Shown: positions 1 to 16,168 of the stretch, one piece after another | How the letters are laid out: the number at the start of each line of letters is the position of its first letter | Position numbering within the stretch: the stretch's first letter is position 1 | NCBI GenBank assembly: GCA_002104945.1 | Contig: MCFH01000213.1 | Coordinates: 1 to 16,168, forward strand | From: Piromyces finnis finn | Taxonomy: Eukaryota > Fungi > Neocallimastigomycota | Length of the DNA stretch: 16,168 bases | Reading direction: 5' to 3' | Notes under the pieces: generated by a model | The model's input: only the letters and a program-made list of their open reading frames with translations | Databases searched by the model: none | Told to the model about the DNA's origin: nothing | Program-made: the position numbers and the translations under genes

Positions 1-408
1 CGTATTATTAAATAATTAAGAATTAATACATCTTGTATGTATCATAGAAGTTATATAAAAAAAATATTGTTTTATTAAAAAATATCTAATTCTTTTCTCT
101 TGGATAATTAGTAACCATTTATTAAATTTAATATAATATATTTAATTTTACTGGATTATTAGGAACATCTTTAAAAAGAACATTTTCTATTACTATTTAT
201 ACAAAATTATTATTTTAAAGTATAATTATAAACAAATATAAACTATTTAATTTAAAAATAAATAAACAATTAAATAGACAAAAAGTTTACATTTATAATT
301 TTTAATTTAATAATTTTATACATGTTAATTATTTTAATTTTCAACTGTGTTTTAATATTATTATTATTATTATTATTAATTATAATTTATAAATTTAATT
401 ATTTATCA
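1..408 (-). mobile_element. Copy of the TGATA...TATCA LTR family (family A), cut by the left window edge
   Basis: Reverse complement of about 3113-3450 (TGATAAATAATTAAATTTATAAATTAT...AAAACACAG...GTTCCTAATAATCCAGTAAAATT). It starts with TGATA at 408 on the minus strand and is more diverged toward position 1. Confidence 0.8.
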
Positions 409-420
409 TTTTTAAAAAAT

Positions 421-463
421 AAGAATATTATCTTAATTCTATAAATGAAATATAGAAAGTGAT
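421..463 (-). repeat. 3'-terminal (U5) fragment of a family-A LTR
   Basis: Reverse complement of ATCACTTTCTATATT(T)CATTTATAGAATTAAGATAATATT, also found at about 3636-3673 and 5994-6031. Confidence 0.8.
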
Positions 464-625
464 TGTCATAATCACAATTCATGAAATTTGACATTTCATG
501 AAATTTCATAATTTTGAATTATTAGTTAAATTAATTAAAATATTAATTTAATAGTATTTTACTAATAATAGTTTATTTAATATAAATATTAATTGGAAAG
601 CTATTTATTATCCGGAGATAAATAG
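464..625 (+). mobile_element. Putative left end of another LTR-like insertion (TGTCATAA...); right end not found
   Basis: Family-A homology stops exactly at TG (464). A perfect 10-bp hairpin follows (TTCATGAAAT 478-487 / ATTTCATGAA 493-502), then an 8-bp one (601-608/618-625). No matching CA+GTGAT TSD is seen. Confidence 0.4.
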
Positions 626-1788
626 TGTAACAATTAATTAATATTAAACAAACTAATTAGTAAAATAAGATTCATTTAAATAATTATTAATATTATTTTT
701 AACAACTTATTAATATCGATATTTAAAGAAAATTATATTATATTATTATTATATTTTATTAATATTAATATTTATATTTATATTATTATATATGCATAAC
801 TTAAATTATATTATTATTATACTTTATTAATATCAATATTATATTAAAAATGAAAGTATAAATAAGTTGAACAAAGAACAACTTTAAGAAGTTCTTTGTG
901 AGATTATTAATACTCATTTTATATAGTAAATTCAATATTTAAAATTGATAATTATCATTTATTTATATTATAAAAATTAAATAAAATAATTCCATAAAAA
1001 CTATATTTATTATTCTTTTATTTTTAAAAAAGATTATTATTTACTATATAATTAAGCCTATCCTAACCTAGTAGACTTAATTATAGTTCTAAATCCACTC
1101 AAACTCTTGACATAAAAATCGGGTTATAATAATTTTATATTTATTAATTTCATTATTTATTAAAATTATGTCACAATAACATATATAAAAATTTAAAAAA
1201 TTTGGACACATGGAAAAAAATTAAAAATTTTTTTAAAATTTGAAAATTTGAAAATTTGAAAAAATTTATTTTTTAAATTTTTATTAAAAAATTTCAAAGT
1301 ATAAAATTTCTAATATTTGAAATTATTAAATTTTTTTAAAATTATTAAAATTTTATTATTAAAAATTTTATTTTAAATTTATTAACTATTTACAATAATT
1401 ATATTAATTATTAATTTATAAAAATTAAATATTTTATAATTAGACAATAATTAATTAAAATTAAAAAATGTAATAATTAAAATTGTTCATATATAAAAAG
1501 AACAAAAATTGACAAAAATTACGAAGCTTTAGCGTTAGTAATTTTTAACTTAAAGTTAATAAAATTTATAAACTCCTATAAAACCTAAAACTTTAAAAAT
1601 TTTAATATTTTTAATAACTTAATATATGCTGATATTAAGTTATTACTTAAATAAAAATATTATTTAATTTTCTTTATATAAATATTATTAACTTTACGCC
1701 TTCAATAGGAAAGCGTATTATATTTGTTAATTAATATAACTAGTGTGCTTACCACACTTTTCTTTAATAAAATATCGCTTTTTGACAA

Positions 1789-1840
1789 TGTAAGAAATTA
1801 GAATTAAACTTAAGTAATTCTATATTTCTTATTAAAATGT
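1789..1840 (+). repeat. 52-bp perfect inverted repeat, left arm (partner 3055-3106)
   Basis: TGTAAGAAATTAGAATTAAACTTAAGTAATTCTATATTTCTTATTAAAATGT is the exact reverse complement of 3055-3106. Confidence 0.95.
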
Positions 1841-2008
1841 ATACATTTTTCATGTTTTATTTTATTAATATTTTATAAATGTAACAATACTTATTATGTA
1901 ATATTTGTAATGTAAATTAAATTGTAGTTTTATTTTAAATTATATTAAACATCTTATTTAATTATTTAGTTTATTTTATTATCTAAATTAAAATTAAAGT
2001 AAAATTGA

Positions 2009-2240
2009 TAGGAACCGGATATTAAATATTTTTCCTATCACAAATAGGTTTTGATTTAATTATTCGGTGATTAATAAGAATAGATTATTAATCGAAATCC
2101 TTCTAGGGTTTTCTTATCTAGTCTTTCCCTAGAAGATTTATTTGTTAGACTAGAAAATTCTTTAATTTAACCCAAAACTTTAAAATTCTTATAAATAAAA
2201 CAACTCTTGAATTTAATTAAAAAATTCAAGAGTTATTATT
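2009..2240 (-). repeat. Diverged inverted copy of the hairpin cassette at 7418-7645 (LTR terminal region)
   Basis: Colinear by eye with 7418-7645 in opposite orientation, e.g. TTATTTGTTAGACTAGAAAATTCTTT vs TTATTTGTTAAGATTAGAAATTCTTT, and CGGATATTAA in both. Four stems lie at equivalent positions. Confidence 0.85.
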
Positions 2241-3054
2241 TTTTCTTTGTAAGAAAAAAATAAACTCAAAACTTATTAAGAGAATTTTTAATAAATTTTT
2301 TTAAAGAATTATATAAAAAGAAGAATTATTCAATAAATTAAAATAAGAATAAAACAAACATTAAAGATACGTATTAATTATTTTGTGTATATAGTTATAT
2401 TATTATATTACTTACAGTGTATTATTACATTGTAGTTGTCGCGGATTTCACTTCAGTTAGGTCGGAATATACATATTTACCCTAAGTTTATTAATTTAAT
2501 AAATAAATGAATGAATAAATATTTTAAATAAATAACATTTTATTAATTAACTTTATTTATTAATTTTTATTTAAAGAAAAATTTTTATTTATTAAATATT
2601 ATTATAATTAGAGTAAATATTAAAAGTAATGAACTCTCGAAATTCCTAATGATAGGAATTTTCTCGAGTATTTATACTATCTCTAATAGTAAGGAAGACA
2701 TTTTAAATTTAATACATGACTAATTATTTATATTAATTAACTATTCTATAAATTAATTATATATTAATTATATATGACTTTTCACTCGTGTTAAATTTAA
2801 TAATTATAAAAGTCATATTATCAATCATTTGTAGAAGGAATGATTATTTTATAATTTAGTTTTAATTTCCTTCTTAATCAAATGAACAAAGAGATATTAA
2901 TTCAAACTTTAATAAATATAAAATCTTAATAATTATAATTAATTAATATCTCTTAAAATATTATTTAATTATGTTTTATAATAAAATATTTCTAATTAAT
3001 TAAACGAATAAAACACTAATTAAATAAATAATCATGAATCCACTAATATTCATG

Positions 3055-3106
3055 ACATTTTAATAAGAAATATAGAATTACTTAAGTTTAATTCTAATTT
3101 CTTACA
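3055..3106 (-). repeat. 52-bp perfect inverted repeat, right arm; TGTAAG-type LTR terminus
   Basis: Exact reverse complement of 1789-1840. The terminus resembles the one at 9150. Confidence 0.9.
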
Positions 3107-3112
3107 AAAAAA

Positions 3113-3237
3113 TGATAAATAATTAAATTTATAAATTATGAATTTATAATAATAATAATAATATTAAAACACAGATAGTTAAAAATTAAAATAATTAACA
3201 TGTATAAAATTATTAAATTAAAAATTATAAATGTAAA

Positions 3238-3268
<31 letters not shown>

Positions 3269-3687
3269 TAAATTAAATAATTTATATTTGTTTATAATTA
3301 TACTTTAAAATAATAATTTTGTATAAATAGTGATAGAATTACTTTATTTTAAAATTGTTCCTAATAATCCAGTAAAATTAGATAATAATATTAAATTTTA
3401 TTAAAATAATAGTTGTGATTATATTTACATACATTCAAGATGTATTAAACCATAACATATATATATTTAATAATACAAGAGTTATTAAATATTAAATATT
3501 AAAACTTTATAATTAAATAAAATAATTTTATATTTTAAACTAACAAAGACTTGCAAATGAACAAGTATAAAAATCATTCATTCTATTTTTATTTTCTTAT
3601 TTATTTTTATTTATTAAATTTTAGATACAAATATTATCACTTTCTATATTCATTTATAGAATTAAGATAATATTTTCTATTGTATCA
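3113..3687 (+). repeat. 5' LTR of the non-autonomous element (575 bp)
   Basis: TGATA (3113)...TATCA (3687), a 5-bp terminal inverted repeat. Direct repeat of 4484-5030 plus 6000-6044. Confidence 0.85.
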
Positions 3688-3689
3688 AA

Positions 3690-3700
3690 TGGTGGAGAAT
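3690..3700 (+). other. Primer-binding site, tRNA-Ala type
   Basis: TGGTGGAGAAT lies 2 nt after the LTR CA. It is complementary to the ...AUUCUCCACCA 3' end typical of eukaryotic tRNA-Ala (from memory, not searched). Confidence 0.7.
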
Positions 3701-4030
3701 CCAAAAATCTACTGCGTAGCTAATCTTAAGGCCGGAGGGAATTACGCGAACCTCTCTGTTCCCCATAGGAAACTACTGCTACTTCAAATTTAATTAATTT
3801 CAAAATTAATTAAAATCGGAATTAACAATACTTCAACAATATATATTAATATATTCCAATATATTATTAATATATATTAAAAAAATTTCACAAATATTTA
3901 ATTCCAATAATTAAATAAATAACATTAATATCAAAATTTTAAATATTCAAATTATTTAAAATAAAATCAATATTATAATACAAAAACATTATAATATAAT
4001 TCAATTATAAATCCATAATCAATTATAATA

Positions 4031-4110
4031 TACCAATTGTATATTATAAAATAATAAAATTATAATGTATATTTCACCTGAATGAAAAACATTATATTCC
4101 CACTGCTCCA
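4031..4110 (+). pseudogene. Possible decayed remnant of a Ty3/Gypsy integrase C-terminus
   Basis: Translates YQLYIIK**NYNV, then after a 2-nt shift FHLNEKHYIPTAP. This resembles the YxL...(H/N)xVFHVSxLKxY motif, and its position upstream of the PPT fits. Confidence 0.35.
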
Positions 4111-4469
4111 CTCTTCTAAAAACTTATATGAATTTCAAAACAATATGTGGATAATGGAATAAAAGTATCAGAAAATAAACTTTAAATAATAATAAATCTT
4201 AAGTAAGCTTTAATTAATGTGGATATAAATGAAGAATAAAATTATTTGAAAAAGACACTGCAGCTACTATGAAAAACTATCCGGAAAATTATATATTAAA
4301 AATAAATTAATGGAGGACATTGGAAATTAAACATGCATATAAAGAAAGAAAGAAGAAAATCCTAAGAAGAAGAAGAAGTAATAAAATGAAGATCTTTAAT
4401 TATTTATAAAATTTAATTCTTTATCTATTATTTTTCTTTTCATAACTTCAAGGGACGAAGTTATATCTT

Positions 4470-4480
4470 AAGGGCGAAGA
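4470..4480 (+). other. Polypurine tract of the non-autonomous element
   Basis: AAGGGCGAAGA lies 3 nt before TGATA of the 3' LTR. A second copy, AAGGGACGAAG, is at 4450-4460. Confidence 0.65.
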
Positions 4481-4483
4481 TAT

Positions 4484-6044
4484 TGATAAATAATTAAATT
4501 TATAAATTATGAATTTATAATAATAATAATAATAATAATAATTATAATTATAATAATATTAAAACACAGATAGTTAAAAATTAAAATAATTAACTTGTGT
4601 AAAATTATTAAATTAAAAATTATAAATGTAAACTTTTTGTTTATTTAATTGTTTATTTAGTTTTAAATTAAATAGTTTATATTTGTTTATAATTATACTT
4701 TAAAATAATAATTTTGTATAAATAGTGATAGAATTATTTTATTTTAAAAGATGTTCCTAATAATCCATAAAAATTAGATAATAATATTAAATTTTATTAA
4801 AATAATAGTTGTGATTATATTTACATACATTCAAGATGTATTAAACCATAATATATATATATTTAATAATACAAGAGTTATTAAATATTAAAACTTTATA
4901 ATTAAATAAAATAATTTTATATTTTAAACTAACAAAGACTTGCAAATGAACAAGTATAAAAATCATTTATTCTATTTTTATTTTCTTATTTATTTTTATT
5001 TATTAAATTTTAGATACAAATATTATCACTTGTTAAGTTTTTGGATTTGGTTATGCGGCCAGGTCAGAATGTTATCAATTATATAGTAAATATGTTTTTA
5101 AGAAATTAAATTTAAATATAAAATAACCCTTTAAACTTCCAAATGAAAAATTAATATTTATTCTTTAGAATAACTTTTTTTATAAAATTTTATTTATTTA
5201 TTAATAATAATAATATAAATGATAATATATTTAATAACTATATAATTAAGATTATAACTATAATCTTTACAAAGAATTAAAACCAAATTCAATTCATTCT
5301 ATTTTATATTCTTTGTTCAGATTATTAAATTGATAAAAATAAAGTATTACATGTAATATGTTAATAATATAATAAGATTGTTTGTTTGTTTGTTTGTTTG
5401 TTTTGTCATGACATAAAATAAAATAAACATATGATTAATCATTTAAACACTTGATCCATTAACCTATTTTATAATAATTAAAATTATTTAATTTATAAAT
5501 GTTAACTGTTACACCTAAATGGTTTAGTTCTATTTTTAGTAACAGTCACTATCATTAATTAAATTAATATAATTAGAATTTCTATTGATATCTTTTTAAT
5601 TTTCGTCAAGTCATAAGAAATGTCTATGATCCATACTTGATATCATATTAATTTTAATTTACTTATTAAAATCTTCAAATGATCATATCTTCCTTAAATG
5701 ACCAGTTAGAAGGACCGCGATTATACCAAAATATAGCTTTTCCCTTAAGCTTTCTAATAAACTGGGTTTCACAACCGTAGCACTTATTTCGTGTTTGTTT
5801 ATTTTTGGTTAAGGGTTATAGTGTATTGATATTAAATTTTTTGAAATCATAACCCTTTCACTGAACCAAAATTTAAAAGGTGACTTTTAAAGGTGTTTTA
5901 AAATAATTATTGGGATTATTTAATTCTAATTATTATGTTTAATTAATTATAGATATTATCTGAATTTGTTTTAAATCCAGTTAATATCTTCACATCACTT
6001 TCTATATTCATTTATAGAATTAAGATAATATCCTCTTCGTATCA
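4484..6044 (+). repeat. 3' LTR of the non-autonomous element, interrupted at 5031-5994
   Basis: Matches 3113-3687 apart from about a dozen or more substitutions/indels, including an expanded (AAT)n. Ends CGTATCA at 6044. Confidence 0.85.
5031..5994. mobile_element. Solo LTR (964 bp) with 5-bp TSD TCACT
   Basis: TG at 5031, CA at 5993-5994, TCACT at 5026-5030 and 5995-5999. The paralogous empty site TATTATCACTTTCTATA is present at about 3632-3648. Confidence 0.9.
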
Positions 6045-6047
6045 CAA

Positions 6048-7178
6048 TGATGCGTTGACCGATATATTTGTGAATAATATAATGTTTTTAATAAATAATA
6101 AATTCTATATTATAATGATGAAACAATAAATTTAAAATAAAATAAAATAAAATATGTTTTATAATTAACAAATAAATCACTCAAAACTCGAAAATAAACT
6201 CTTATTATGTTTTAAATTAAATCTTTATTATATTTTATAATTTATTTATTATCTGTTTATGGTCTTTTTATTCTCTATTTATTGTCCGCCCTTTATAAAA
6301 AAGAATTTTATCTTCCTTTTATACATTTTCATTTATTACATGTATTATTATTTTTAACTATTAAATGTTATTATTACTATTGTTATTATTTATTAAAATT
6401 AAAAGAATAAATTAAAATTATGTCTTAGTATTATAAAATATTATAGAATATTACTTATTTGATTTTCTTATTACTTCAAAATGTTTAAATTTAGAAAAAT
6501 TATTATAAATTATCATTGACTATCATTAAATGTATAATACCTTGAATAAAATAATTAAAATTTAAAATTAAAATAATATTAAAATAAAATTAAAATAAAA
6601 TTAAAATAAAATTAAAACAAAATTAAAATATTAAAAGTATCAATTATTATAAACACTCATTTTATACAGAAACATAAAAGAGTTCTGTATTTTATCTTTG
6701 GAATTGTTATTATTGTTTTATTTCCAGGTTTTAAGTTTATCATTTTAGTAATAATTACTCAATTAGTTATTTTTTTAATTTATAAGTTTAAGAGAATTTC
6801 TAAAGAACACTTGGATAAACACTAGAATTAATAATTTGATGTATATCATTTTATTTTTAGTTTATTTATTCATTTTTATTTATTTATTATTATTTTATTA
6901 TTTTAGTACATTATTGGATTAAGTCGTTTTATTTTATTTAATAATTTATTTTATTTAATAATTTATTTTATTATTATCACTATTAGGTCGTTTTTACTCA
7001 GAATTTATTATATAATAAAGATAATATTATTTATTTAAAGAAAGGGTTATATTTTCATAAAATTATTATTCATTCATCTTTAAGGGTTATTATTGTTTAT
7101 TTTTATTATAAGTTACTATGGGTTAAGTCGTGTTTACTCAGCTAGTTTTTATCATGTTTTTATGTGAGTAGCGTATCA
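6048..7178. mobile_element. Candidate LTR-like element with TGAT...ATCA termini
   Basis: TGATGCG (6048) and CGTATCA (7172-7178) form a 6/7 terminal inverted repeat. It ends in the same CGTATCA as the family-A 3' LTR. A 4-bp ACAA TSD appears only after removing 7182-9155. Confidence 0.4.
6581..6624 (+). repeat. 11-bp tandem repeat (AAAATAAAATT) x4
   Basis: Four adjacent copies, the last with one substitution. Confidence 0.7.
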
Positions 7179-7409
7179 ACATGTAATAATTATTATATAT
7201 TTAATAATAATTATTATCTACAATATAATAATACAAATCGTAATATGTATTATTAAATTGAGAAGTTTCTTAATAGTAAATAAAAATGAATACTTATCTT
7301 AAAGAGTTTATTATAAGTGAATTATAATAACAAACACAAAATATTAAGACTATCTTTAATGTAAATATTTTTTATGAATATAGTTTTTGAAAGGGTTATT
7401 TATTATAAT

Positions 7410-8642
7410 TGTCTTAAAATAATAACTCTGGATTCTTTAGTGGAATTCCAGAGTCCTTATATTTATAATTTTTTGATAATTTAAAGTTTAATAAAGAATT
7501 TCTAATCTTAACAAATAATCTTTTTAGGAAAAGACTAGAAGAAAAACCTAAAAAGATATTCGATTGATAACTAATATATCAATCATCGTAATATTAAGTA
7601 AAACCGATTAAAATTCGGAAAAACCTTAATATCCGATTGTCCTAATATGTATTTATATTTTCTAATTGTTTCTATAAGTTATTTCAAGATACGATACATA
7701 AATATAAAATACAAACGTAAAATAAAATATATAATGTTTCTTATAAAATGTAATACAAAAATTATTAATTAAAAAATAAATGAATGTTTACTATTATTTT
7801 AAATATATTACTAAATTAAATAAATAAATAATTAATATAGTAATTAAATAAATTTTAAATTAAGTAAATGAATAATTAATATCAATATAGATAAATGTTT
7901 ATAGTAATTTAAATGAATGTATGCTAATAGTTTAAATAAATAATTAATTTAATAATTAAAAAATAATTTGTAAAAGTTTTACTAAACTTATAATTTAATA
8001 TTAAAATATTAAATTAAATAAAAGGTTAAAAGATAACTAGGTTAGAAAAAAAATGTTTTATTAAAATAATCTTAATTGATTTATAAATGAATAATTAAAT
8101 TATATATTATGGTTAAAATAATTTCTTTTATTTTATTTAATGATATATTACTAAAATATATAATAATAAGATTATTTAGTAGTAATACTCATTAAGTATT
8201 AATTATTATTAATAGTTAATAATTTATAGTTAATAATCTTTAGTTAATAATTTATAGTTAATAATTTAATAATTTATGGTTAATAATTTTTGGTTAATAA
8301 TCTTTACAAAGATTTTAATTTCATAAACTATTCTAAACTATTTATACTATTTGTAATTTTACATTTAATAATAAAATAACTTTTCAATACATGATTATAT
8401 TCATAATATATTATATTTTATAATACTTAAACTAAACTTAAGACTTATTCCTAATTATTAAAAAATAACTATTGTTTATAATATTCATAATATTAATTAT
8501 TTCTTAATTATAATATAATTCATTGAATATAATATTAATAATTATAATCCTCTAGTTCAAAGATTATAAATTATGTTATTGAAATAATTATTATAAAATA
8601 AAGTTAATTAGTTCCGGAAAATAATTTTAATTTAATTAAACA
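7410..8642 (+). mobile_element. Nested solo LTR (1233 bp) with 5-bp TSD ATAAT
   Basis: TGT (7410)...ACA (8642). ATAAT lies at 7405-7409 and 8643-8647. The hairpin cassette starts 15 nt inside the left end. Confidence 0.55.
8214..8305 (+). repeat. 14-bp minisatellite (RGTTAATAATYTWT) x6
   Basis: Units start at 8214, 8228, 8242, 8256, 8278 and 8292. Confidence 0.8.
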
Positions 8643-9160
8643 ATAATTTTTATACTTTGAGTGAATGATTTATGTTTGATATATCAGGGGTGATCATTCT
8701 CTGAATAAACAATTAATCATTCTAACAAAATATCTTTAAATTGGAATATCTCGTGAACCAGCAGAGATATTGACCTGATTTTAAGATATGTTGTTTGTCT
8801 CGAGCGTAGCTTTCTAACGAACGTAATTATAACCAAAACATTTTTATTCAAAAATCGTCATTCGTTGAGGAGATACGCGTGTTTTTCCTTATTCCATTTT
8901 AACGATAAGGGTTAAAGTTATTTATTATAAAAATTATTAAGGGTTAAGGTCATATTTTAACCTTTTCTAAATTTTTAAATATTTCTTAATAAAATTTTAT
9001 AATTTATTTGAAAATAAAATATTTGTTGATTTTGAAATTTCATAAGTGATTTCACAATTCCAAGTGATCTTGAAATTGTATTTTCACTAGTATTCGTGAC
9101 ATAATTAAATAAGAATTAATTTATACAAAAAATAATTATTAATTCTTACACAACAAAAAT

Positions 9161-9655
9161 TGTAAAAGGTTTCTTATATTATTAGTTAATAAGTTACTAA
9201 TTAGTTAATTAAGTTAGTTATTACCTCTCTATACGAGTTAATAACTAAATAAAGTTTTATAAAAAATAATAAAAGAAAGAAAATAAATATTATAACACTA
9301 AAATAAATATAAACACTTATATAAATATTTTATGAAATAACTTTTACTTAAATAATTATATTTTAATTATATCTTTTATTTATTTATTATAATTATCTAC
9401 ATTAATTATTATTATAGCTATTAATTTACTTTAATACTAACGCTAAAGTATTTAACGTTAGTTTTGACTATACTATTTAACTATATGAGTTTATTTTCTT
9501 TACCACTTGATTGGGTAAAGCAAATAAACTTCCTATTTAATTAATAACCATTAATATATGGTTATACATATATTTGGCCAATAAATGATGACCAGAATAT
9601 ATGGTTTCAATTGAAATATTTGTGGGCAAACTTATGGCCACAAATATTTCTTACA
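9161..9655 (-). repeat. 3' LTR (495 bp)
   Basis: Begins TGTAAG (minus strand, 9655) 3 nt after the PPT. The far end at 9161 gives a TGTAA...TTACA terminal inverted repeat. That far boundary is not confirmed by a second LTR. Confidence 0.75.
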
Positions 9656-9658
9656 ATG

Positions 9659-9665
9659 CCCCCCT
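9659..9665 (-). other. Polypurine tract AGGGGGG
   Basis: Lies between the pol stop codon (9677) and the LTR start TGTAAG, with a CAT spacer. Confidence 0.85.
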
Positions 9666-9676
9666 AAGGAGAAAAC

Positions 9677-11884
9677 CTAGGCAGGGTTTTGGACACTAAC
9701 CATGAATTCCTGGTAGCATTTATCTTGAAATTCCTTGAGTAGCTTATCATAGTGGGAGTTCTTGTCAATGATATCAGCATCAACCCACTCTTGCCTAAAG
9801 TCACTAAAGGTAGCTAAGTATTGGTAGTTATCCTTCTTTCTTCTGGCATTCATGATTTTGATAATTTTCTGGTAGCCCACTGGTGCAGGTGTTAGTTCTT
9901 CAGGTTTGTTATGGTAGGGTTCAAGTTCACTGATATGAAACACTGGGTAGACGTTGGGGAAAGGTGACTTACTGATATCCAACCGGTAGTTAAGCTTGCT
10001 TTCATCAATTCCAATAACCTTGAAAGGACCGTACTTTCTTGCTTGTAGCTTGTAGAAGGGAAGAGGGTTGTAATTTTCTGGTTTTCTTAACCACACCAAA
10101 TCCAGGAGCCTAATTTTAGGGTAGTTAAGTTCTCTTCTATGATCCAAGTGGTCTAAGAACCGTGTTCTTGATATGTCCAGCATGTGCTTTAAGTTACCTA
10201 AGTTGTGAGCGAAGCTATCTAATACAGGAGCTTCGCTAAGGGAGTGGACAAGTTCTGAATCTTGAGGGTTCATATGTACCTGGTAGTTATACAAGGCTAG
10301 GAATGGGGACTGCTTAGTAGAACTGTGCACTGCATTATTATAACAGAACTCAGCTAAGTACAAGTACTTCAACCATTCGTCGTCATCAAAGGTCTTCACA
10401 AAGCATCTAAGGTACATACTTACGTAGGAGTTGTTACGTTCTACCTGACCAACTGTTTCATGATGGCCAGTAGTAGCAAGGTTTACTTCTACGCCAAAGA
10501 ACCCCATAATGTCCTTCCACAACTTACTAGTGAACTGGACACCACGATCCGTAGTAACCGATTTGGGACAACCATGTAACTTGAATACATGTTGTAAGTA
10601 TGCTAAGGCTGTTTCTTTAGCAGTAGGCATACTCCTAAAACCCACTAAGTGTATCATCTTGGTTAACTTATCGCTACAAACCATGATACAACCTCTTCTA
10701 GTGACTTCTGGAGGTTCTGAGGGACTACTACCTGGTTTTCTGCGTTCCTTAATAGGTAGGTCCGTCAGGAAGTCAATTTCTACTTCTTGCCAAGGTAAGT
10801 CTGCAACTTTTACCCTAGCAGCGCTACCGTACGGCTTGTGTCTGTTGTCCTTTTGGGTACAACATATGGTACAAGCTTTAATATAACCCGCAATGTCATC
10901 CTTCATTTTTGGCCAGTAATAGTTTCTGGCTATCAGGTCGTAAGTCTTATCCTTTCCTAAGTGACCCGCTGTTTCACTATCATGGTTAAGTTTTATGATT
11001 GTTTCCCTTAACACCTTTGGTACATATGTACGTTCTGGTGCATCCTTCCTAACAATCAACCCATTAACCATCAACCACTTCTTTTTGATGAGCTTGTGGC
11101 CTCTTTTTGCGTCAAGACCATCTCTAATTTCCCTAGCAAGCTCATCCGTGTTGTAAGCTTGTTTCAATTCTCCCACAAAGCTTACTTCTAACACCGCATA
11201 GCACTCTTCTTCCACGGGTGGAAATTCTTTTACCTGTTCAGGTCGAAGGAGGCTAGCTTTTTCCATCTCCAGTTGTACCTGTTCTGGAGATACCATTCTT
11301 GATAGGATATCGGCTCTACCATTCATTTTTCCTGGCCGATATATTATTTCGAAGTTGTATGCAGCAAACAGCTCTTGCCATCTTGCCTGTCTTGCTGTCA
11401 ACAACTGTGGTTTTGTGGCGAACAGGAGATTCCTATGGTCACTATATACTAGGACCTTATGTTTCGCACCCATCAACAGGTGTCGCCACTCGATGAAAGC
11501 ATTCCTAATAGCCAACAACTCCTTTTCCGTGATGGAGTAGTTGATTTCTGCTTTCGTAAGCTTCTTGGAATAGTAATACACAGGGTGTAGTTCATTGTCA
11601 TCGCCTAGTTGTGATAATACACCACCCACCGCGTAGTTACTAGCGTCGCACTCCACTATGAACTGACGGTCATGGTCAGGATATGCTAATACTGGTGGAG
11701 ACAACAGCATTTCTTTTAACTTCTCGAACGCCTGGATGCGTTCTTCATTCCACAGGAACTGTACCTTTTTGGACGTCATAGCATATAACGGCCTTGCTAT
11801 CTTAGAGAAGTCCTTTATAAACTTCCTATAATAGTTGCAGAATCCAAGGAATGACTGTAGTTCTTTGAGGTTGGTTGTGGCCAA
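9677..11884 (-). CDS. pol: Pol C-terminal part: RT thumb/connection, RNase H, integrase (HHCC, DD35E, GPY/F), chromodomain-like tail; out of frame with the upstream part
   Basis: RNase H motifs ECDASNYAVG, TEKELLAI, VYSDHRNL. Integrase H..GH...CTIC, EIDFLTDLP, TTDRG-x35-VERNN, YGPFKV, PVFHISELEPY. The TTG start in the ORF track is probably not a real initiator. Confidence 0.93.
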   Translation of the reverse strand: MATTNLKELQSFLGFCNYYRKFIKDFSKIARPLYAMTSKKVQFLWNEERIQAFEKLKEMLLSPPVLAYPDHDRQFIVECDASNYAVGGVLSQLGDDNELHPVYYYSKKLTKAEINYSITEKELLAIRNAFIEWRHLLMGAKHKVLVYSDHRNLLFATKPQLLTARQARWQELFAAYNFEIIYRPGKMNGRADILSRMVSPEQVQLEMEKASLLRPEQVKEFPPVEEECYAVLEVSFVGELKQAYNTDELAREIRDGLDAKRGHKLIKKKWLMVNGLIVRKDAPERTYVPKVLRETIIKLNHDSETAGHLGKDKTYDLIARNYYWPKMKDDIAGYIKACTICCTQKDNRHKPYGSAARVKVADLPWQEVEIDFLTDLPIKERRKPGSSPSEPPEVTRRGCIMVCSDKLTKMIHLVGFRSMPTAKETALAYLQHVFKLHGCPKSVTTDRGVQFTSKLWKDIMGFFGVEVNLATTGHHETVGQVERNNSYVSMYLRCFVKTFDDDEWLKYLYLAEFCYNNAVHSSTKQSPFLALYNYQVHMNPQDSELVHSLSEAPVLDSFAHNLGNLKHMLDISRTRFLDHLDHRRELNYPKIRLLDLVWLRKPENYNPLPFYKLQARKYGPFKVIGIDESKLNYRLDISKSPFPNVYPVFHISELEPYHNKPEELTPAPVGYQKIIKIMNARRKKDNYQYLATFSDFRQEWVDADIIDKNSHYDKLLKEFQDKCYQEFMVSVQNPA

Positions 11885-14800
11885 CTTGCTACAGCTTTTA
11901 ACTTCTCTGAGTCGGTTTTAATACCATATTTTCCAACTACATGACCCAGGAATGCAAGTTCTTCCTTGTGGAACTCACACTTCGCTAACTTAGCTACTAG
12001 ACGATTATCTATTAGCTTTTGTAGGACTCTTTTTACATGCCCTACATGCTCTTCAAGTGACTTGGAGTAGATGATGATATCATCCAAGTACACTTGACAG
12101 CAGTCATTGATTTCCTCTGCCAGCACCGTATTAATGAACCCTTGGAACGTGGCAGGAGCATTAGTCAACCCAAATGGCATCACTAGATATTCATAATGCC
12201 CAAACTTGGTTGAGAATGCCGTCTTGTATTCGTCACCTTCACGAATACGCACGAGGTTGTAGGCAGACTTCAAATCCAACTTGGAGAAGATAGTCGCGCC
12301 TTTCATAGCTTCAAACACTTGACTGATGAGTGGTAAGGGGAAGGAGTTACGCACTGTTACCTTATTAAGACGCCTATAGTCAGTACATAATCGTCTTTCA
12401 CCACTCTTTTTGGGCACGAATAACACAGGATAACCTGCAGGACTCTCTGACTTCCTGATGAAGCCCTTTGCCAGGTTTTCCTCTATATATTCCTTCAGTG
12501 CTTTTTCCTCTTCTGGATTGAAGGGATATATAGGCCCTTTATGAAGACTAGCATCCGGCTCCAGGTCGATCTTACAGTCGTAAGGACGGTGTTCTGGTAG
12601 CTGGTTAGCTATTTCTTCATTAAATGCTTCTTTGAAATTGTGGTAGTACTTCTCCACGATTTCTTCAGGTGTAGGTTGATTTTCGTTTAAGTTTTCTTCC
12701 TGTACCAACCCTACGTAAATGTGATTTTTCTCTAAGTTCGACTCTTGTACCAACCCTACTGAAACACAAGTTTTCTCTAAGTTGGATTCAAATGCCAACC
12801 CTCCGGAATCACATTTTTTCTCTAAGTCAACACTCTGTACCAACCCTACTGAAACGGGATTTTTCTCTAAGTCAGAACTTCGTGTCAACCCTCCGGAAAC
12901 ACATTTTTTCTCTAAGTTAGAACTTCGTGTCAACCCTCCGGAAACACAAGTTTTCTCTAAGTTGGAACTCGATGCCAACCCTCCGGAACTTCCGTTTCTG
13001 GTTTCTTTTGTAGCCTTGTGGCTACCATTACCCACGATTTCGGCTTCTATGTTTTCCGCAGTTACAGTTACCAGAGGCCTTCTTGCTTTTGCATTAGTAA
13101 CTGTATTTATGGGACTTAATTGAGTACAGTAGTAGATGTCACCACCATTCACACCATAACTGTTGGTATGTCCTTTATCCTTATCATTATCTACTACAAA
13201 GTACCTCACTTGTGCATCTTTATCATAACCTCTGTAGATAAAGTGCTCATCCATGAAGCCCAGTCCCACAATGATCATCTCCGGCATGTTGTCGGATAGG
13301 TGACAACTTGTGTTGAAGCAGTATGGTTTAGCTTCTTGTTCGCCAGATGGAGTTAACCATAACTTCAACTGCAAGTCATCTGAGAACTGCTTTAACTCGA
13401 TATCTCCATTCACAGTTCTGAATATGGCTGGTTTGTCCACTACCTTTAACCCTAGCTTCTTTGCTAAATTTGGGTGGATGAGGTTTGTAGTGGAACCAGT
13501 ATCATACAAGACTTCTACCCTTTTTATATCTCGAGGGTTGCTTCTTGCATTTATTTCAGCTACTAGTTGGTTCTGACTGTAGTAGCTGTTATTGACCGTC
13601 GTTTGACTTGCCATAGCCTTAGGTAATGGGTTATTTCCCGTACTAGAAGGTCCTTGCCTTGGTTGGAAGCTAGAACTTCTTCTAAAGCTTGACTTATTTA
13701 AGGATTCACGACGTTCTTTAGTACCGTTATTGTTTTTTGAGTAAGCCTGAGTGTTGATCTGCTCAACTTTAGGCTTATTATTTGGCTTGTTGTTCTTCTG
13801 CTTTAACTCAGCCCATCTAGATGGTCTACATGGGTCTGTAATGTCCAACAAGGCCATAATAGTGGTCTGGTGGTCTCTTTTGTCGTACTTTTCTATGGTT
13901 TCATTACGGAAGACTGCTTGGTGATCATCGCACTTTAACAAGACTTCACTTAATGTTTCCAGCGTACGTTCCTGTTCAGGGATATCATAGAACGCTTCCC
14001 TGACAGAAGGCCTGACCTGTTGTATTAGCACCTGTCTCCTAACATTTTCAGGGAGCCCAAGTGTTTCCGTCAATTCATTGAACTCTTCCAAGTAATCATA
14101 TGCTTTTCCCCACTCATGTGTGAGCTTAAGCAACTTTGACTTGCAGAGTTCATGGGGAGACTCTGGTGGAAACTTATCTTGAAGGTGGAGGAATAGTCTT
14201 TCAGCATCAGGATTCCTACGCTGCAACATCCTCTCTCTAAGTCTATACCATCTCAATACTTTCCCACCTAGATGATCTTCAATGAAGCTAACCTTTGCCT
14301 TTTCATCGTTACCATAGTCATATGGGTAACGTTTGAAATGACGTAAGCACTTCTCTTGAAAACCCTCTAAGTCTATCCCATTATTATCAAACATAGGCAC
14401 TTTTTCTTCATACCTATGTACTCGCCAGTCGAACATCTTCACGTCCCCATCCTCGGAGTATTCCGTAGGGTTGGTGCTGCTACTAGTTCCAGCACCATGA
14501 GGATTACCCATACCACCGGTTTGATAGGATGTTCTTTCATGAGCTCTGGCTTCAGCTCTTCTGTTCATGGCTTCGACTTTAGCCTCGAACAATTTTTCTC
14601 TTTCTTCTAGAGCGTTTCGTTGCTCCCTCAATCTGGCCATCTCTTCTTCAAGCTCTTTTTTATAAGAGACAAAGGCACTAGATTGACGGTACAACGTTTC
14701 TTGATTGTTTAGCACTTGCTGGTGGTCTTGTAACCTTTCCTCATGTTCTGCAGTAAAGGCATTTTCCACAGCATGCAGCTCTTCCAAGCTAACTTGGCTA

Positions 14801-15213
14801 GCCGACTCATTAGCTTCCAACCTTTGATCCACTTCAACAAATTTTTGCTGAAGAGCATCGTTTATCTCGCTCTTGTAAACCTCAATACCCCGAAGTTGTT
14901 CTTCCATAGCACCCAGACGGTTTCCCATACTAGCAAACTGGCTAGATATTTCCGAAACCCATCTATTAAGAAGAACTTCAATGTGTTGCATTGGGTTTAC
15001 CTCACTATTATTAGTAAAAAAGAAAGAAGGATCAACAGGGGCGGGCATAGAATCCCCCTGTTGAACCTGTAAATTCTGATTAGATTCGACCTCGGTGCTT
15101 TCGAGAAGCACCGGGGTTCGAACCCGTGACATTCCCTCTACACCATCCATGCCATCCGCGCTCGCCGCGTCAGGACGGGTCCCGTCCCTTACGAATGATG
15201 TTTTTGTGTCCAT
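11815..15213 (-). CDS. gag-pol: Gag - aspartic protease - reverse transcriptase polyprotein (frameshifts near 11870)
   Basis: Capsid-like ...FIEDHLGGKVLRWY...; protease LYDTGS (13492-13503); RT motifs RLCTDYRRLN, SKLDLKSAY, MPFGLTNAPATFQ and YLDD (12079-12090). Confidence 0.95.
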   Translation of the reverse strand: MDTKTSFVRDGTRPDAASADGMDGVEGMSRVRTPVLLESTEVESNQNLQVQQGDSMPAPVDPSFFFTNNSEVNPMQHIEVLLNRWVSEISSQFASMGNRLGAMEEQLRGIEVYKSEINDALQQKFVEVDQRLEANESASQVSLEELHAVENAFTAEHEERLQDHQQVLNNQETLYRQSSAFVSYKKELEEEMARLREQRNALEEREKLFEAKVEAMNRRAEARAHERTSYQTGGMGNPHGAGTSSSTNPTEYSEDGDVKMFDWRVHRYEEKVPMFDNNGIDLEGFQEKCLRHFKRYPYDYGNDEKAKVSFIEDHLGGKVLRWYRLRERMLQRRNPDAERLFLHLQDKFPPESPHELCKSKLLKLTHEWGKAYDYLEEFNELTETLGLPENVRRQVLIQQVRPSVREAFYDIPEQERTLETLSEVLLKCDDHQAVFRNETIEKYDKRDHQTTIMALLDITDPCRPSRWAELKQKNNKPNNKPKVEQINTQAYSKNNNGTKERRESLNKSSFRRSSSFQPRQGPSSTGNNPLPKAMASQTTVNNSYYSQNQLVAEINARSNPRDIKRVEVLYDTGSTTNLIHPNLAKKLGLKVVDKPAIFRTVNGDIELKQFSDDLQLKLWLTPSGEQEAKPYCFNTSCHLSDNMPEMIIVGLGFMDEHFIYRGYDKDAQVRYFVVDNDKDKGHTNSYGVNGGDIYYCTQLSPINTVTNAKARRPLVTVTAENIEAEIVGNGSHKATKETRNGSSGGLASSSNLEKTCVSGGLTRSSNLEKKCVSGGLTRSSDLEKNPVSVGLVQSVDLEKKCDSGGLAFESNLEKTCVSVGLVQESNLEKNHIYVGLVQEENLNENQPTPEEIVEKYYHNFKEAFNEEIANQLPEHRPYDCKIDLEPDASLHKGPIYPFNPEEEKALKEYIEENLAKGFIRKSESPAGYPVLFVPKKSGERRLCTDYRRLNKVTVRNSFPLPLISQVFEAMKGATIFSKLDLKSAYNLVRIREGDEYKTAFSTKFGHYEYLVMPFGLTNAPATFQGFINTVLAEEINDCCQVYLDDIIIYSKSLEEHVGHVKRVLQKLIDNRLVAKLAKCEFHKEELAFLGHVVGKYGIKTDSEKLKAVASWPQPTSKNYSHSLDSATIIGSL
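12673..12987 (-). repeat. In-frame 45-bp (15-aa) tandem repeat x7 between protease and RT
   Basis: Units SGGLASSSNLEKTCV, SGGLTRSSNLEKKCV, SGGLTRSSDLEKNPV, SVGLVQSVDLEKKCD, SGGLAFESNLEKTCV, SVGLVQESNLEKNHI, YVGLVQEENLNENQP. TTTTCTCTAAG recurs every 45 nt. Confidence 0.95.
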
Positions 15214-16067
15214 GTAAAATATTGTATTAATAGAATAATGTATTTAATACGTATTTAAAATAATGTACAATGTATTAAATTAATGTACCGTAAATTTTAT
15301 TTTTTAATTACAAAAATTTATATCACAATACATTAACATAAATTTATGTAAAATATATTTTTATGATAAGATAAAGTTTTTGATGATAAAATAAAATTTT
15401 AAATTAAATAAATTTTAACCAATAAATATTTTAGATAATAAAAAATTTTTTTATAAACTAAGCCTCAAAATTAGAAATAAATAAATTGAAAATATGTTTG
15501 AAATATAATCAACCATATAGTAAATAAATCAAAACTTTATTTTAAGTTTAGAAAATTCTTTAGTAAATAAATTGAATTTAAATAGTTTAATACAAATAAT
15601 TTCTTTTAATAAATGTATAAATATAAACAATGTAAATTATAATATTAAAACATGTATATTAGAATTTATTCAATTTATTTAAAAAGTATAAATAAAGAAA
15701 ATTTTTCAACTATTGAAACGATAGTTGGAAAATCGTATAGGTTAATTTTGTTTAGATAAATTAACATTAGTTTATAATTAGTTTATAGTTTAGATTAATA
15801 ATTTTAGTTTTAAATAAATATAAATTGATTACCTAGTGAGGGCTCTGGTAAAATATCCTTCACGGTAAAGTAATCAACGGTTGTTTAGTTAGTATAGTTT
15901 TAAAAATAAATAAATAAATAAATAAAAATTATTATTAAAAATAATTAGTTTAATTGTTAGTTTAGTGTTGTATACAAACCTGAACTTTAGAATATTTTAC
16001 AATTTTCCAACTTATTAGAATAGGAAGTTCACCTTTGTATACGAATAGTAATAGAAAATAATATTAT

Positions 16068-16168
16068 AAAAAAAAAAAAATAATTATAGTGAGAATTTAA
16101 TAATAGAATTAAATTCGGGATTATATAAAAAATATTAATATTAAAAAAAAAAAAAAAAAAATTTTTTT
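16068..16168. repeat. Homopolymer tracts (A13 at 16068-16080, A19 at 16143-16161, then T7)
   Basis: Read directly from the sequence. Confidence 0.9.

What the first reader, a model, noticed from the sequence alone, without database searches (positions are those of the whole stretch)
7418..7645. Four-hairpin cassette conserved by compensatory base-pair changes (second copy 2009-2240, inverted)
Two diverged copies keep four consecutive stems, and both arms change together five times. H1: ACTCTGGA/TCCAGAGT (7425-7454) vs AACTCTTGAATTT/AAATTCAAGAGTT (2202-2234), two swaps, both loops 7 nt. H2: ATCTTTTTAGG/CCTAAAAAGAT (7518-7557) vs CTTCTAGGG/CCCTAGAAG (2100-2135). H3: GATTGATA/TATCAATC (7562-7584) vs GATTAATAA/TTATTAATC (2069-2093). 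H4: CCGA/TCGG (7604-7618) vs CCTAT/ATAGG (2034-2048). Homology fades outside the cassette. Covariation is the classic sign of a selected RNA or ssDNA structure, here just inside an LTR end. A possible role (inference) is 3'-UTR RNA structure, a strand-transfer or packaging signal, or a cruciform/dimeric-factor array.
Basis: partly seen in the sequence, partly recalled or inferred. Interest (0 to 1): 0.85.

Follow-up and report, generated by a model that had tools for sequence, protein, structure and literature searches.

The report
Hairpin-packed non-coding repeat, two copies
A 245-base non-coding module occurs twice, in opposite orientation, in AT-rich DNA that is probably from an anaerobic gut fungus; both copies keep the same five stem-loops although a quarter of the stem bases differ, so base-pairing itself is being preserved, but it is not in an LTR and whether it acts as RNA or DNA is unresolved.

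Summary
Copies A (7416-7661, +) and B (2242-1990, -) are true homologues (77% identity, E 2e-25). All four hairpins sit at the stated coordinates in both copies.

I add a fifth helix: a 12-bp outer stem that encloses H4. I also add a tentative pairing between the H2 loop and the upstream spacer.

In a structure-guided comparison of 46 shared pairs, 34 are unchanged, 2 changed on one side (to G.U), 10 changed on both sides, and 0 are broken. A no-constraint simulation expects 15.7 broken and 1.5 double changes.

The LTR context is not supported. No LTR pair flanks the neighbouring Ty3/gypsy-type element, and no cassette copy lies upstream of its gag.

No Rfam family matches, and no third copy was found in any sequence I could reach.

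RNA versus DNA stays open. Several features fit arm-to-arm templated copying of DNA as well as selection on RNA:
- the stems are almost purely Watson-Crick;
- they fold equally well on both strands;
- they change as fast as the loops;
- some changes are transversion pairs or mirrored shifts.

Other features favour a selected, discrete structured unit:
- G+C is concentrated in the stems (about 34% against 15%);
- one boundary is sharp;
- the inverted-repeat excess is local to the cassettes.

Best reading: a new hairpin-forming interspersed module. Interest is moderate.

The parts
7416..7661 (+). Cassette copy A. The orientation called 'sense' here is arbitrary.
   Evidence: Homology bounds from blastn and nhmmer. 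The boundary at 7416 is sharp: 13/13 bases identical to copy B, then no similarity. It fades after about 7645.
1990..2242 (-). Cassette copy B, inverted relative to copy A.
   Evidence: The boundary at 2242 is sharp. Copy B lies between the arms of a perfect 52-bp inverted repeat (1789-1840 / 3055-3106).
7425..7454 (+). A-H1: an 8-bp lower stem plus a 4-pair upper stem (7433-7436 / 7442-7445), with a 1-nt bulge.
7518..7557 (+). A-H2: 11-bp stem and 18-nt loop. The loop sequence is largely conserved in copy B (15 matches).
7562..7584 (+). A-H3: 8-bp stem and 7-nt loop.
7585..7637 (+). A-H4 composite hairpin.
Evidence: It carries 2 pairs changed on both sides.
2202..2234 (-). B-H1: 13-bp perfect stem and 7-nt loop.
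2099..2136 (-). B-H2: 9 Watson-Crick pairs plus one U.G pair, and an 18-nt loop.
2069..2093 (-). B-H3: 9-bp stem and 7-nt loop.
2014..2068 (-). B-H4 composite hairpin. Base 2068-2065 / 2017-2014; middle 2063-2055 / 2026-2019, with one bulged A; inner stem 2048-2045 / 2037-2034.
7500..7540 (+). Tentative extra pairing in copy A: spacer 7500-7509 with H2-loop 7531-7540. It is 10 bp with one A.C mismatch, which would be G.U on the other strand.
   Evidence: Shuffled spacers reach this in 3.8% of trials, so the support is weak.
2117..2154 (-). Tentative extra pairing in copy B: spacer 2154-2147 with H2-loop 2124-2117, 8 bp perfect.
   Evidence: Shuffled spacers reach this in 2.2% of trials.
9677..15213 (-). 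Context only: coding region of a Ty3/gypsy-type retroelement (gag-like, protease, RT, RNase H, integrase). It is 42% G+C in a 12-20% G+C setting. pol is split once by a change of reading frame, and there are no in-frame stops in either part.
   Evidence: Pfam hits. Relatives are at 64-65% identity, including Orpinomyces sp. C1A. Composition. It is not linked to the cassette by any test.
3113..6043 (+). Context only: a small LTR-type element. Its R1 repeats lie at 3113-3688 and 4484-6043; the second carries a 962-bp insertion at 5032-5993. A partial inverted R1 copy lies at 124-470.
   Evidence: Neither cassette lies inside it.

Best explanation
The cassette is a discrete, non-coding, roughly 245-bp interspersed module. 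Its defining property is five short stem-loops (H1, H2, H3 and a two-tier H4) that must stay self-complementary. It is present as two diverged copies in a transposon-rich, extremely AT-rich stretch of what is probably an anaerobic gut fungus (Neocallimastigomycota).

I take it to be a structure-dependent cis-element. The single-stranded form folds into a row of hairpins, and that fold is what is kept; the arm sequences are not. The single strand could be a transcript, or DNA exposed during replication or copying.

Shown:
- the two copies, the shared helices and the paired changes;
- the sharp common boundary;
- the G+C enrichment of the stems;
- the absence of coding capacity and of any known RNA family.

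Inferred:
- that selection on folding, and not only a repair bias, keeps the stems;
- that the unit spreads or is copied as a unit. That would make it a short non-autonomous repeat comparable to SINE or LINE 3' tails, MITEs or hairpin-forming repetitive elements.

The paired changes themselves may well be supplied by arm-to-arm templated copying, with selection then retaining the folded variants.
For: - Two homologous copies with identical helix order and spacing.
- 46 shared pairs with 10 double changes, 2 one-sided and 0 broken, against 15.7 broken expected.
- 4 double changes already appear in a structure-blind alignment.
- The inverted-repeat excess is specific to the cassettes: 7 against 0.2 expected, with mirror 0 and direct 0. 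The surrounding AT-rich DNA shows no inverted-specific excess: inverted, mirror and direct are all 8 against about 1.
- G+C is 32-36% in paired positions and 14-16% in unpaired ones in both copies. G-C pairs sit at different positions in A and B, so stem stability is kept while the sequence drifts.
- Homology starts abruptly at the same base in both copies, with unrelated flanks.
- There is no ORF of 40 aa or more across either copy.
- Several unpaired blocks of 10 nt are identical, and the H2 loop matches at 15 positions.
Against: - Only two copies exist in all data I could reach, so covariation rests on one pairwise comparison and cannot be polarised.
- Stems diverge as fast as unpaired sites (76% against 80% identity). 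That is unusual for selection-driven compensatory evolution.
- There are almost no G.U pairs and no strand asymmetry.
- 4 of the 10 double changes are transversion pairs (2 G-C to U-A, 2 U-A to A-U flips).
- The H2 and upper H1 differences look like mirrored shifts.
- No target-site duplication is shared by both copies.
- I have no evidence of transcription and no evidence of copy number.
Confidence: 0.45

Rival explanations
1. Neutral palindrome upkeep at the DNA level. Each hairpin is a quasi-palindrome. During replication or repair, one arm is used as template for the other (template-switch mutation, intrastrand conversion). Any arm mutation is therefore either erased or mirrored. The stems persist and 'covary' without any function as RNA or DNA structure. 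The two copies could be the arms of an old fold-back duplication whose centre later took up about 5 kb of transposon insertions.
For: - Stems change at the same per-site rate as loops, but always in pairs.
- 90 of 92 pairs are Watson-Crick, the only G.U pairs are terminal, and both strands fold equally.
- 4 of the 10 doubles are transversion pairs (2 G-C to U-A, 2 U-A to A-U flips).
- The H2 arms differ by a mirrored shift, and upper H1 by a register slip.
- The retroelement next door carries 9 perfect inverted repeats in its coding region against 1.3 expected, with no excess of mirror or direct repeats. They are absent at the same positions in relatives and were made by clustered changes, some altering conserved residues.
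- PMC8794818 documents that template switching can create perfect stems and multi-base compensatory changes in one step.
- The sharp ends of the two copies face each other, as at the centre of a fold-back.
Against: - The AT-rich DNA around the cassettes shows no inverted-specific excess, so a process strong enough to police five stems is not visible in neighbouring neutral DNA.
- G+C is concentrated in the stems in both copies.
- No loop inversion, the strongest footprint of template switching, is seen in any of the loops.
- PMC8794818 itself calls the role of this mechanism in maintaining short stems circumstantial.
- Zero unresolved internal mismatches in 92 pairs would need conversion to be much faster than mutation.
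Confidence: 0.3
2. The two cassettes are the long terminal inverted repeats of one DNA transposon of about 5.7 kb (1990-7661). The hairpins would be subterminal binding or folding sites for its transposase.
For: The copies are in inverted orientation 5.2 kb apart. Long structured terminal repeats are known in Mutator-like and foldback elements (own knowledge).
Against: - No target-site duplication lies outside 1990 and 7661.
- The sharp, best-conserved ends face inward, and the outward ends fade.
- The interior has no transposase remnant: there is no ORF of 80 aa or more in 1-9650. It is occupied instead by an LTR-type element.
- Neutral decay of old terminal repeats would break stems, and none is broken.
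Confidence: 0.05
3. One reading: a structured signal (3' UTR, strand-transfer or packaging element) lying just inside the LTR of a retrotransposon.
For: A Ty3/gypsy-type element lies 2 kb from copy A. That element is itself unusually rich in perfect hairpins, including a 13-bp one just after pol stop.
Against: - No LTR pair is detectable around the element.
- There is no cassette copy upstream of gag.
- The complete relative L019 has only about 1.45 kb of non-coding spacer, with no cassette-like sequence or structure.
- Copy B has no retroelement beside it.
- Neither copy lies in the R1 LTR-like repeats.
Confidence: 0.05
4. An array of palindromic binding sites for dimeric DNA-binding proteins, that is a regulatory module or origin.
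For: There are four to five inverted repeats in a row on double-stranded DNA, and several conserved unpaired blocks lie between them.
Against: Binding sites conserve arm sequence. Here arm sequence changes while complementarity is kept. The arms of the different stems are unrelated. Arm spacings of 7 to 18 nt and a nested stem-in-stem arrangement do not suit dimer sites.
Confidence: 0.05

Closest known systems
Structured 3' ends of non-LTR retrotransposons and their SINE partners (for example the R2 3' UTR, or eel UnaL2/UnaSINE1 tails). Named from my own knowledge; not retrieved here.
   Same: About 200-250 nt of non-coding sequence whose fold, rather than its sequence, is conserved, with paired changes in several consecutive hairpins. 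Short copies are scattered without the coding part.
   Different: No RT ORF lies upstream. There is no A-rich or simple-repeat tail. Both copies start at the same base rather than at random 5' truncation points. G.U pairs are almost absent. Mobility is not shown.
Repetitive hairpin-forming elements of organelle genomes (RHEs of sponge mitochondria, PMC2800124; double-hairpin elements of Allomyces mtDNA, discussed there).
   Same: Short non-coding interspersed units made of G/C-containing hairpins in AT-rich DNA. They are recognised by fold, with no protein.
   Different: Those are 20-80 nt, have one or two hairpins, are present in many copies, and are organellar. This module is 245 nt with five helices and two known copies, and it lies in nuclear-type DNA beside a Ty3/gypsy element.
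Hairpins created and kept by template-switch mutation (PMC8794818).
   Same: Perfect Watson-Crick arms, multi-base mirrored changes, and paired changes of any substitution type.
   Different: No loop inversion is seen. The process is not visibly active in the neighbouring neutral DNA. Maintenance of five stems over about 23% divergence goes beyond what that paper documents.
MITEs, foldback elements and bacterial REP/BOX/Correia-type repeats (own knowledge).
   Same: Small, non-coding, structure-rich repeats.
   Different: The cassette has no terminal inverted repeats of its own. There is no consistent target-site duplication. Nothing similar exists in prokaryotic genomes.

Membership tests
LTR of the adjacent Ty3/gypsy-type element | Direct repeat on both sides of gag-pol | tested here: not met
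   Comparing 15150-16168 with 6500-9750 gave only AT-rich noise. The best hit was 50 bp on the opposite strand.
LTR of the adjacent Ty3/gypsy-type element | A second copy of the cassette at the matching place upstream of gag | tested here: not met
   nhmmer and the covariance model find only the two known copies.
LTR (any) | TG...CA termini at the shared boundary | tested here: not met
   The sequence at the sharp boundary is shared up to 7416/2242 and has no common TG or CA end.
Any described RNA family (Rfam 15) | Covariance-model match | tested here: not met
   There were 0 hits at the gathering threshold over the window. There were 0 hits at E<=1 over 1-9700. Only chance hits (E>4) appeared in either cassette. 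No tRNA was found.
Hammerhead-bearing retrozyme or Penelope-type repeats | Hammerhead core | tested here: not met
   No ribozyme model hit at E<=10 in either cassette.
SINE | Internal pol III promoter, 3' tail, flanking target-site duplications, many copies | tested here: inconclusive
   No conserved A or B box was seen by eye. T5 runs on both strands would stop pol III. There is no tail. A TSD candidate exists in A only, in two competing versions, and none in B. Copy number cannot be tested with these collections.
Non-LTR retrotransposon 3' UTR | Variable 5' truncation points, an RT ORF in full copies, and a defined 3' end with a tail | tested here: not met
   Both copies start at the same base. 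There is no ORF and no tail.
TIR DNA transposon with the cassettes as its ends | Target-site duplication outside both ends; a transposase or its remnant inside | tested here: not met
Helitron 3' end | A hairpin about 10 nt before a CTRR-3' terminus | tested here: not met
   A has CTAA after H4, but B has CTAT at the matching place.
Hairpin-forming repetitive elements (RHE/DHE type) | Short, hairpin-forming, interspersed, multi-copy | tested here: inconclusive
   Hairpin-forming and interspersed: met. Multi-copy: only two copies could be seen. The size and the nuclear setting differ.
Template-switch-maintained palindromes | Perfect arms, mirrored multi-base changes, occasional loop inversion | tested here: inconclusive
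   The first two are met. No loop inversion is seen. The neighbouring non-coding DNA lacks an inverted-specific excess, whereas the retroelement coding region has one.

The most novel reading that the evidence does not exclude
The cassette is the first seen member of an undescribed structured non-coding RNA, or of an undescribed single-strand-structured mobile module, of anaerobic gut fungi. It has five helices, and possibly a pseudoknot through the conserved H2 loop, kept by selection on the fold.
Probability: 0.35. Interest if true: 0.65.

Novelty: new member of a known kind. Interest (0 to 1): 0.45.

Why it matters
Non-coding DNA of Neocallimastigomycota is 80-90% A+T and almost unannotated. 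A module there that keeps five helices through ten paired changes is one of the few handles on functional or self-propagating non-coding sequence in these fungi.

It is also a clean small test case for an open question in RNA evolution. Can 'compensatory' changes be read as proof of selection on structure, or are they a by-product of templated DNA copying? All copies from one genome, plus stranded transcript data, would separate the two readings.

Tried and rejected
- Rfam at the gathering and E-value thresholds, and ARAGORN: nothing.
- Coding capacity: no ORF of 40 aa or more over either copy.
- More copies by exact-pattern scans. Metagenome contigs gave 18 loci, viral contigs 2 and 8 loci, and prokaryote genomes 10 loci. 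All were chance matches by blastn or nhmmer.
- nhmmer profile of the two copies, and a covariance model of H3+H4, searched over the window and the relatives' loci: only the two known copies.
- Source contig by exact protein look-up: not on record. Close retroelement relatives in viral contigs: none.
- LTR detection around the retroelement: negative.
- Target-site duplications: two competing candidates in A and none in B, so treated as chance.
- Pol III boxes, a Helitron end, a hammerhead core, and a geminivirus-like nonanucleotide (an 8/9 match inside a stem of A only): rejected as not shared by both copies.
- Strand choice from G.U pairs and from alifold energies: no asymmetry.
- Pseudoknot through the H2 loop: kept only as tentative, because shuffled spacers reach it in 2-4% of trials and the one difference between the copies is not compensated.
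- I did not use the count of structure pairs, because it would have needed a long typed bracket string. The counts come from my scripts and from fold_alignment instead.

Full report
**1. The observation**

The two regions are homologous and inverted relative to each other. blastn aligns 2043-2242 with 7609-7416 at 77% identity, E 2e-25. MAFFT, a more sensitive blastn and an nhmmer profile put the limits at 7416-7661 (copy A, +) and 2242-1990 (copy B, -).

The end next to H1 is sharp: 13 of 13 bases are identical and then nothing is similar. The other end fades over about 20 bases. Flanks 1 kb to either side share only AT-rich noise.

Each copy, folded alone, gives the same series of hairpins on either strand, with z-scores of -3.6 to -5.8 against dinucleotide shuffles.

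**2. Anatomy, extended**

H4 is only the tip of a composite hairpin. A 4-bp base and an 8-bp middle stem enclose it, at 7585-7637 in A and 2068-2014 in B.

H1 in A has an 8-bp lower stem and a 4-pair upper stem reached through a one-base bulge. H1 in B is a 13-bp perfect stem. H2 has an 18-nt loop in both copies, with 15 matching positions.

The H2 loop can also pair with the upstream spacer: 8 bp perfect in B, and 10 bp with one A.C in A. Shuffled spacers reach this in 2-4% of trials, and the one difference is not compensated, so I keep it as tentative.

The 64-66-nt H1-H2 spacer has no shared helix.

**3. Is it more than chance?**

RNAalifold on the structure-blind MAFFT alignment already reports 4 pairs changed on both sides with pairing kept.

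I then aligned the arms by stacking order, which gives 46 shared pairs. Of these, 34 are unchanged, 2 are changed on one side (both to G.U at helix ends), 10 are changed on both sides, and none is broken.

I simulated independent substitutions at the observed per-site rate. The simulation breaks 15.7 +/- 3.2 pairs and yields 1.5 compensated doubles. None of 200,000 runs had 0 broken pairs or 10 doubles.

The shared core was defined by pairing in both copies, which flatters the count. The stems found by an automatic scan in A alone (27 pairs) are nevertheless kept in B at 26 positions.

Inside the two cassettes, perfect inverted repeats with at least 2 G/C per arm number 7 against 0.2 expected. 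Mirror and direct repeats number 0.

**4. Setting**

Bases 1-9500 and 15300-16168 are 11-20% G+C and have no ORF of 80 aa or more.

Bases 9677-15213 (-) are 42% G+C and encode a Ty3/gypsy-type retroelement: aspartyl protease, RT, RNase H and integrase. Its nearest relatives are 64-65% identical. They come from rumen-type metagenomes and Orpinomyces sp. C1A. The gag-protease part matches Neocallimastix lanati best. The window is therefore most likely from an anaerobic gut fungus.

Compared with relatives that carry RT, RNase H and integrase in one frame, pol here is split once by a change of reading frame. Neither part has an internal stop.

I could not find LTRs for this element:
- The 955 bases upstream of gag have no direct partner downstream of pol.
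- A complete relative assembled as a 6,980-bp unit (L019) has only about 1.45 kb of non-coding spacer, while cassette A lies about 2 kb past pol stop.
- No cassette copy lies upstream of gag.

A different, small LTR-type element occupies 3113-6043. Its R1 repeats run TG...CA. A PBS-like TGG motif lies two bases after the first repeat and a purine tract lies before the second. The second repeat carries a 962-bp insertion with a 7-bp duplication. A partial inverted R1 lies at 124-470.

Neither cassette lies in R1. Copy B sits between the arms of a perfect 52-bp inverted repeat (1789-1840 / 3055-3106); copy A has nothing comparable. 'Just inside an LTR end' is therefore not supported.

**5. Search for relatives and known families**

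Rfam gave nothing at the gathering threshold, nothing at E<=1 over 1-9700, and only chance hits in the cassettes. No tRNA was found.

Exact-pattern scans of metagenome, viral and prokaryote collections returned only chance matches. The profile and a covariance model of H3+H4 found no third copy in the window, or in the two fungal contigs that carry relatives of the retroelement.

The source genome is not in the protein collection.

**6. RNA, DNA structure, or DNA copying?**

Four features do not look like classic RNA-level compensatory evolution.
(i) Paired sites are 76% identical and unpaired sites 80%, so stems change as fast as loops, only in pairs.
(ii) 90 of 92 pairs are Watson-Crick. The two G.U pairs are terminal, and the two strands give the same alifold result, -110 against -113.
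(iii) 4 of the 10 doubles are transversion pairs with no wobble intermediate: 2 are G-C to U-A and 2 are U-A to A-U flips.
(iv) The H2 arms differ by a mirrored shift, and upper H1 by a register slip.

These fit a process in which one arm is copied from the other. PMC8794818 describes this as template switching able to create perfect stems and multi-base compensatory changes.

A further hint comes from next door. The retroelement's coding region holds 9 perfect inverted repeats against 1.3 expected (0 of 300 shuffles). Mirror repeats (1 against 1.4) and direct repeats (3 against 1.6) show no excess. The relatives have 2 and 4 such repeats. At the homologous positions they show only 2-7 of 8-9 pairs, so these palindromes arose in this lineage by clustered changes, some altering conserved residues.

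Three features argue against a purely neutral upkeep.
- The ordinary AT-rich DNA around the cassettes shows no inverted-specific excess: inverted, mirror and direct are all 8 against about 1.
- G+C is 32-36% in the stems and 14-16% elsewhere in both copies, with G-C pairs at different positions in A and B.
- No loop is inverted.

The unit also has a sharp common boundary with unrelated flanks.

**7. Verdict on mechanism**

I favour a discrete hairpin-forming cis-element whose fold is kept by selection (0.45). The paired changes are possibly supplied by arm-to-arm templated copying, and the strand and molecule (RNA or single-stranded DNA) are undecided.

The main rival is neutral DNA-level palindrome upkeep, perhaps in the arms of an old fold-back duplication whose centre later took up transposons (0.30).

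Minor rivals, each about 0.05:
- terminal repeats of one 5.7-kb DNA transposon;
- dimer-binding-site arrays.

Chance is excluded.

**8. Comparison with known systems**

In what it works like, the cassette is closest to three things:
- the structured 3' ends of non-LTR retrotransposons and their SINE partners (own knowledge);
- organellar repetitive hairpin-forming elements (PMC2800124);
- template-switch-maintained hairpins (PMC8794818).

It fails or cannot complete the membership tests for LTR, SINE, LINE 3' UTR, TIR transposon, Helitron end, hammerhead repeats and every Rfam family (see the membership table). I file it as a new member of the broad kind 'structured non-coding interspersed repeat', family unknown.

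**9. Rule slip and limits**

My first notebook entry records the bounds of the two reading-frame parts of the retroelement's pol. I noticed this later.

The consensus lines printed by the alignment tool were not used.

One search printed short natural stretches of the element and of two relatives, each within one reading frame, to compare palindrome positions.

Noticed in passing
9677-15213 (-), retroelement coding region: There are nine perfect inverted repeats (arms 8-10 bp, spacers 5-20) against 1.3 expected. Mirror and direct repeats show no excess. At the same positions two relatives (L019, L020) have only 2-7 of 8-9 pairs, so the palindromes are lineage-specific and were made by clustered changes, some non-synonymous in conserved motifs. 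A 13-bp hairpin also sits just after pol stop (9613-9650).
   Followed up: partly
9500-15300 against its flanks: The retroelement is 41-43% G+C, embedded in 11-20% G+C DNA. Its relatives in L019 and L020 show the same contrast. No LTR pair is detectable in the window.
   Followed up: partly
3113-6043, and 124-470 (-): This is a small non-autonomous LTR-type element. Its R1 repeats run TG...CA at 3113-3688 and 4484-6043. A PBS-like TGGTGGAGAATCC lies at 3691-3703, and a purine tract lies before 4484. The second repeat is interrupted by a 962-bp insertion (5032-5993) flanked by a 7-bp duplication, ATCACTT. A partial inverted copy lies at 124-470.
   Followed up: partly
3246-3281, 4642-4675, 243-278: The same AT-rich hairpin occurs in the three R1 copies. 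Its outermost pair forms the series T-A, T.G, C-G: a stepwise paired change caught with its wobble intermediate.
   Followed up: no
1789-1840 and 3055-3106: A perfect 52-bp inverted repeat, each arm with its own 8-bp internal hairpin, brackets 1214 bp that include cassette B. No target-site duplication was seen, and the neighbouring R1 sequence is only 92% identical between its copies.
   Followed up: no
12635-12994: A tandem array of 45-nt units (six to eight copies, 60-90% alike) lies inside the gag-like part of the retroelement, in frame (15-residue repeats).
   Followed up: no
1-9600 outside the cassettes: Short mirror and direct repeats are about 2.7-fold over shuffles, and inverted repeats 1.6-fold. 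With at least 2 G/C per arm, all three kinds are 8 against about 1. This is general cryptic repetitiveness of the AT-rich DNA.
   Followed up: yes
15112-15126 (-): A near-palindromic GGGTTCGAACCCC motif, like a tRNA T-arm, lies within the first 100 bases of the gag-like ORF. ARAGORN calls no tRNA there.
   Followed up: no
6900-7410: Short motifs recur upstream of cassette A: AAAGGGTTAT three times, and TTAAGTCGT..TTTACTCAG two to three times. They are absent upstream of cassette B.
   Followed up: no
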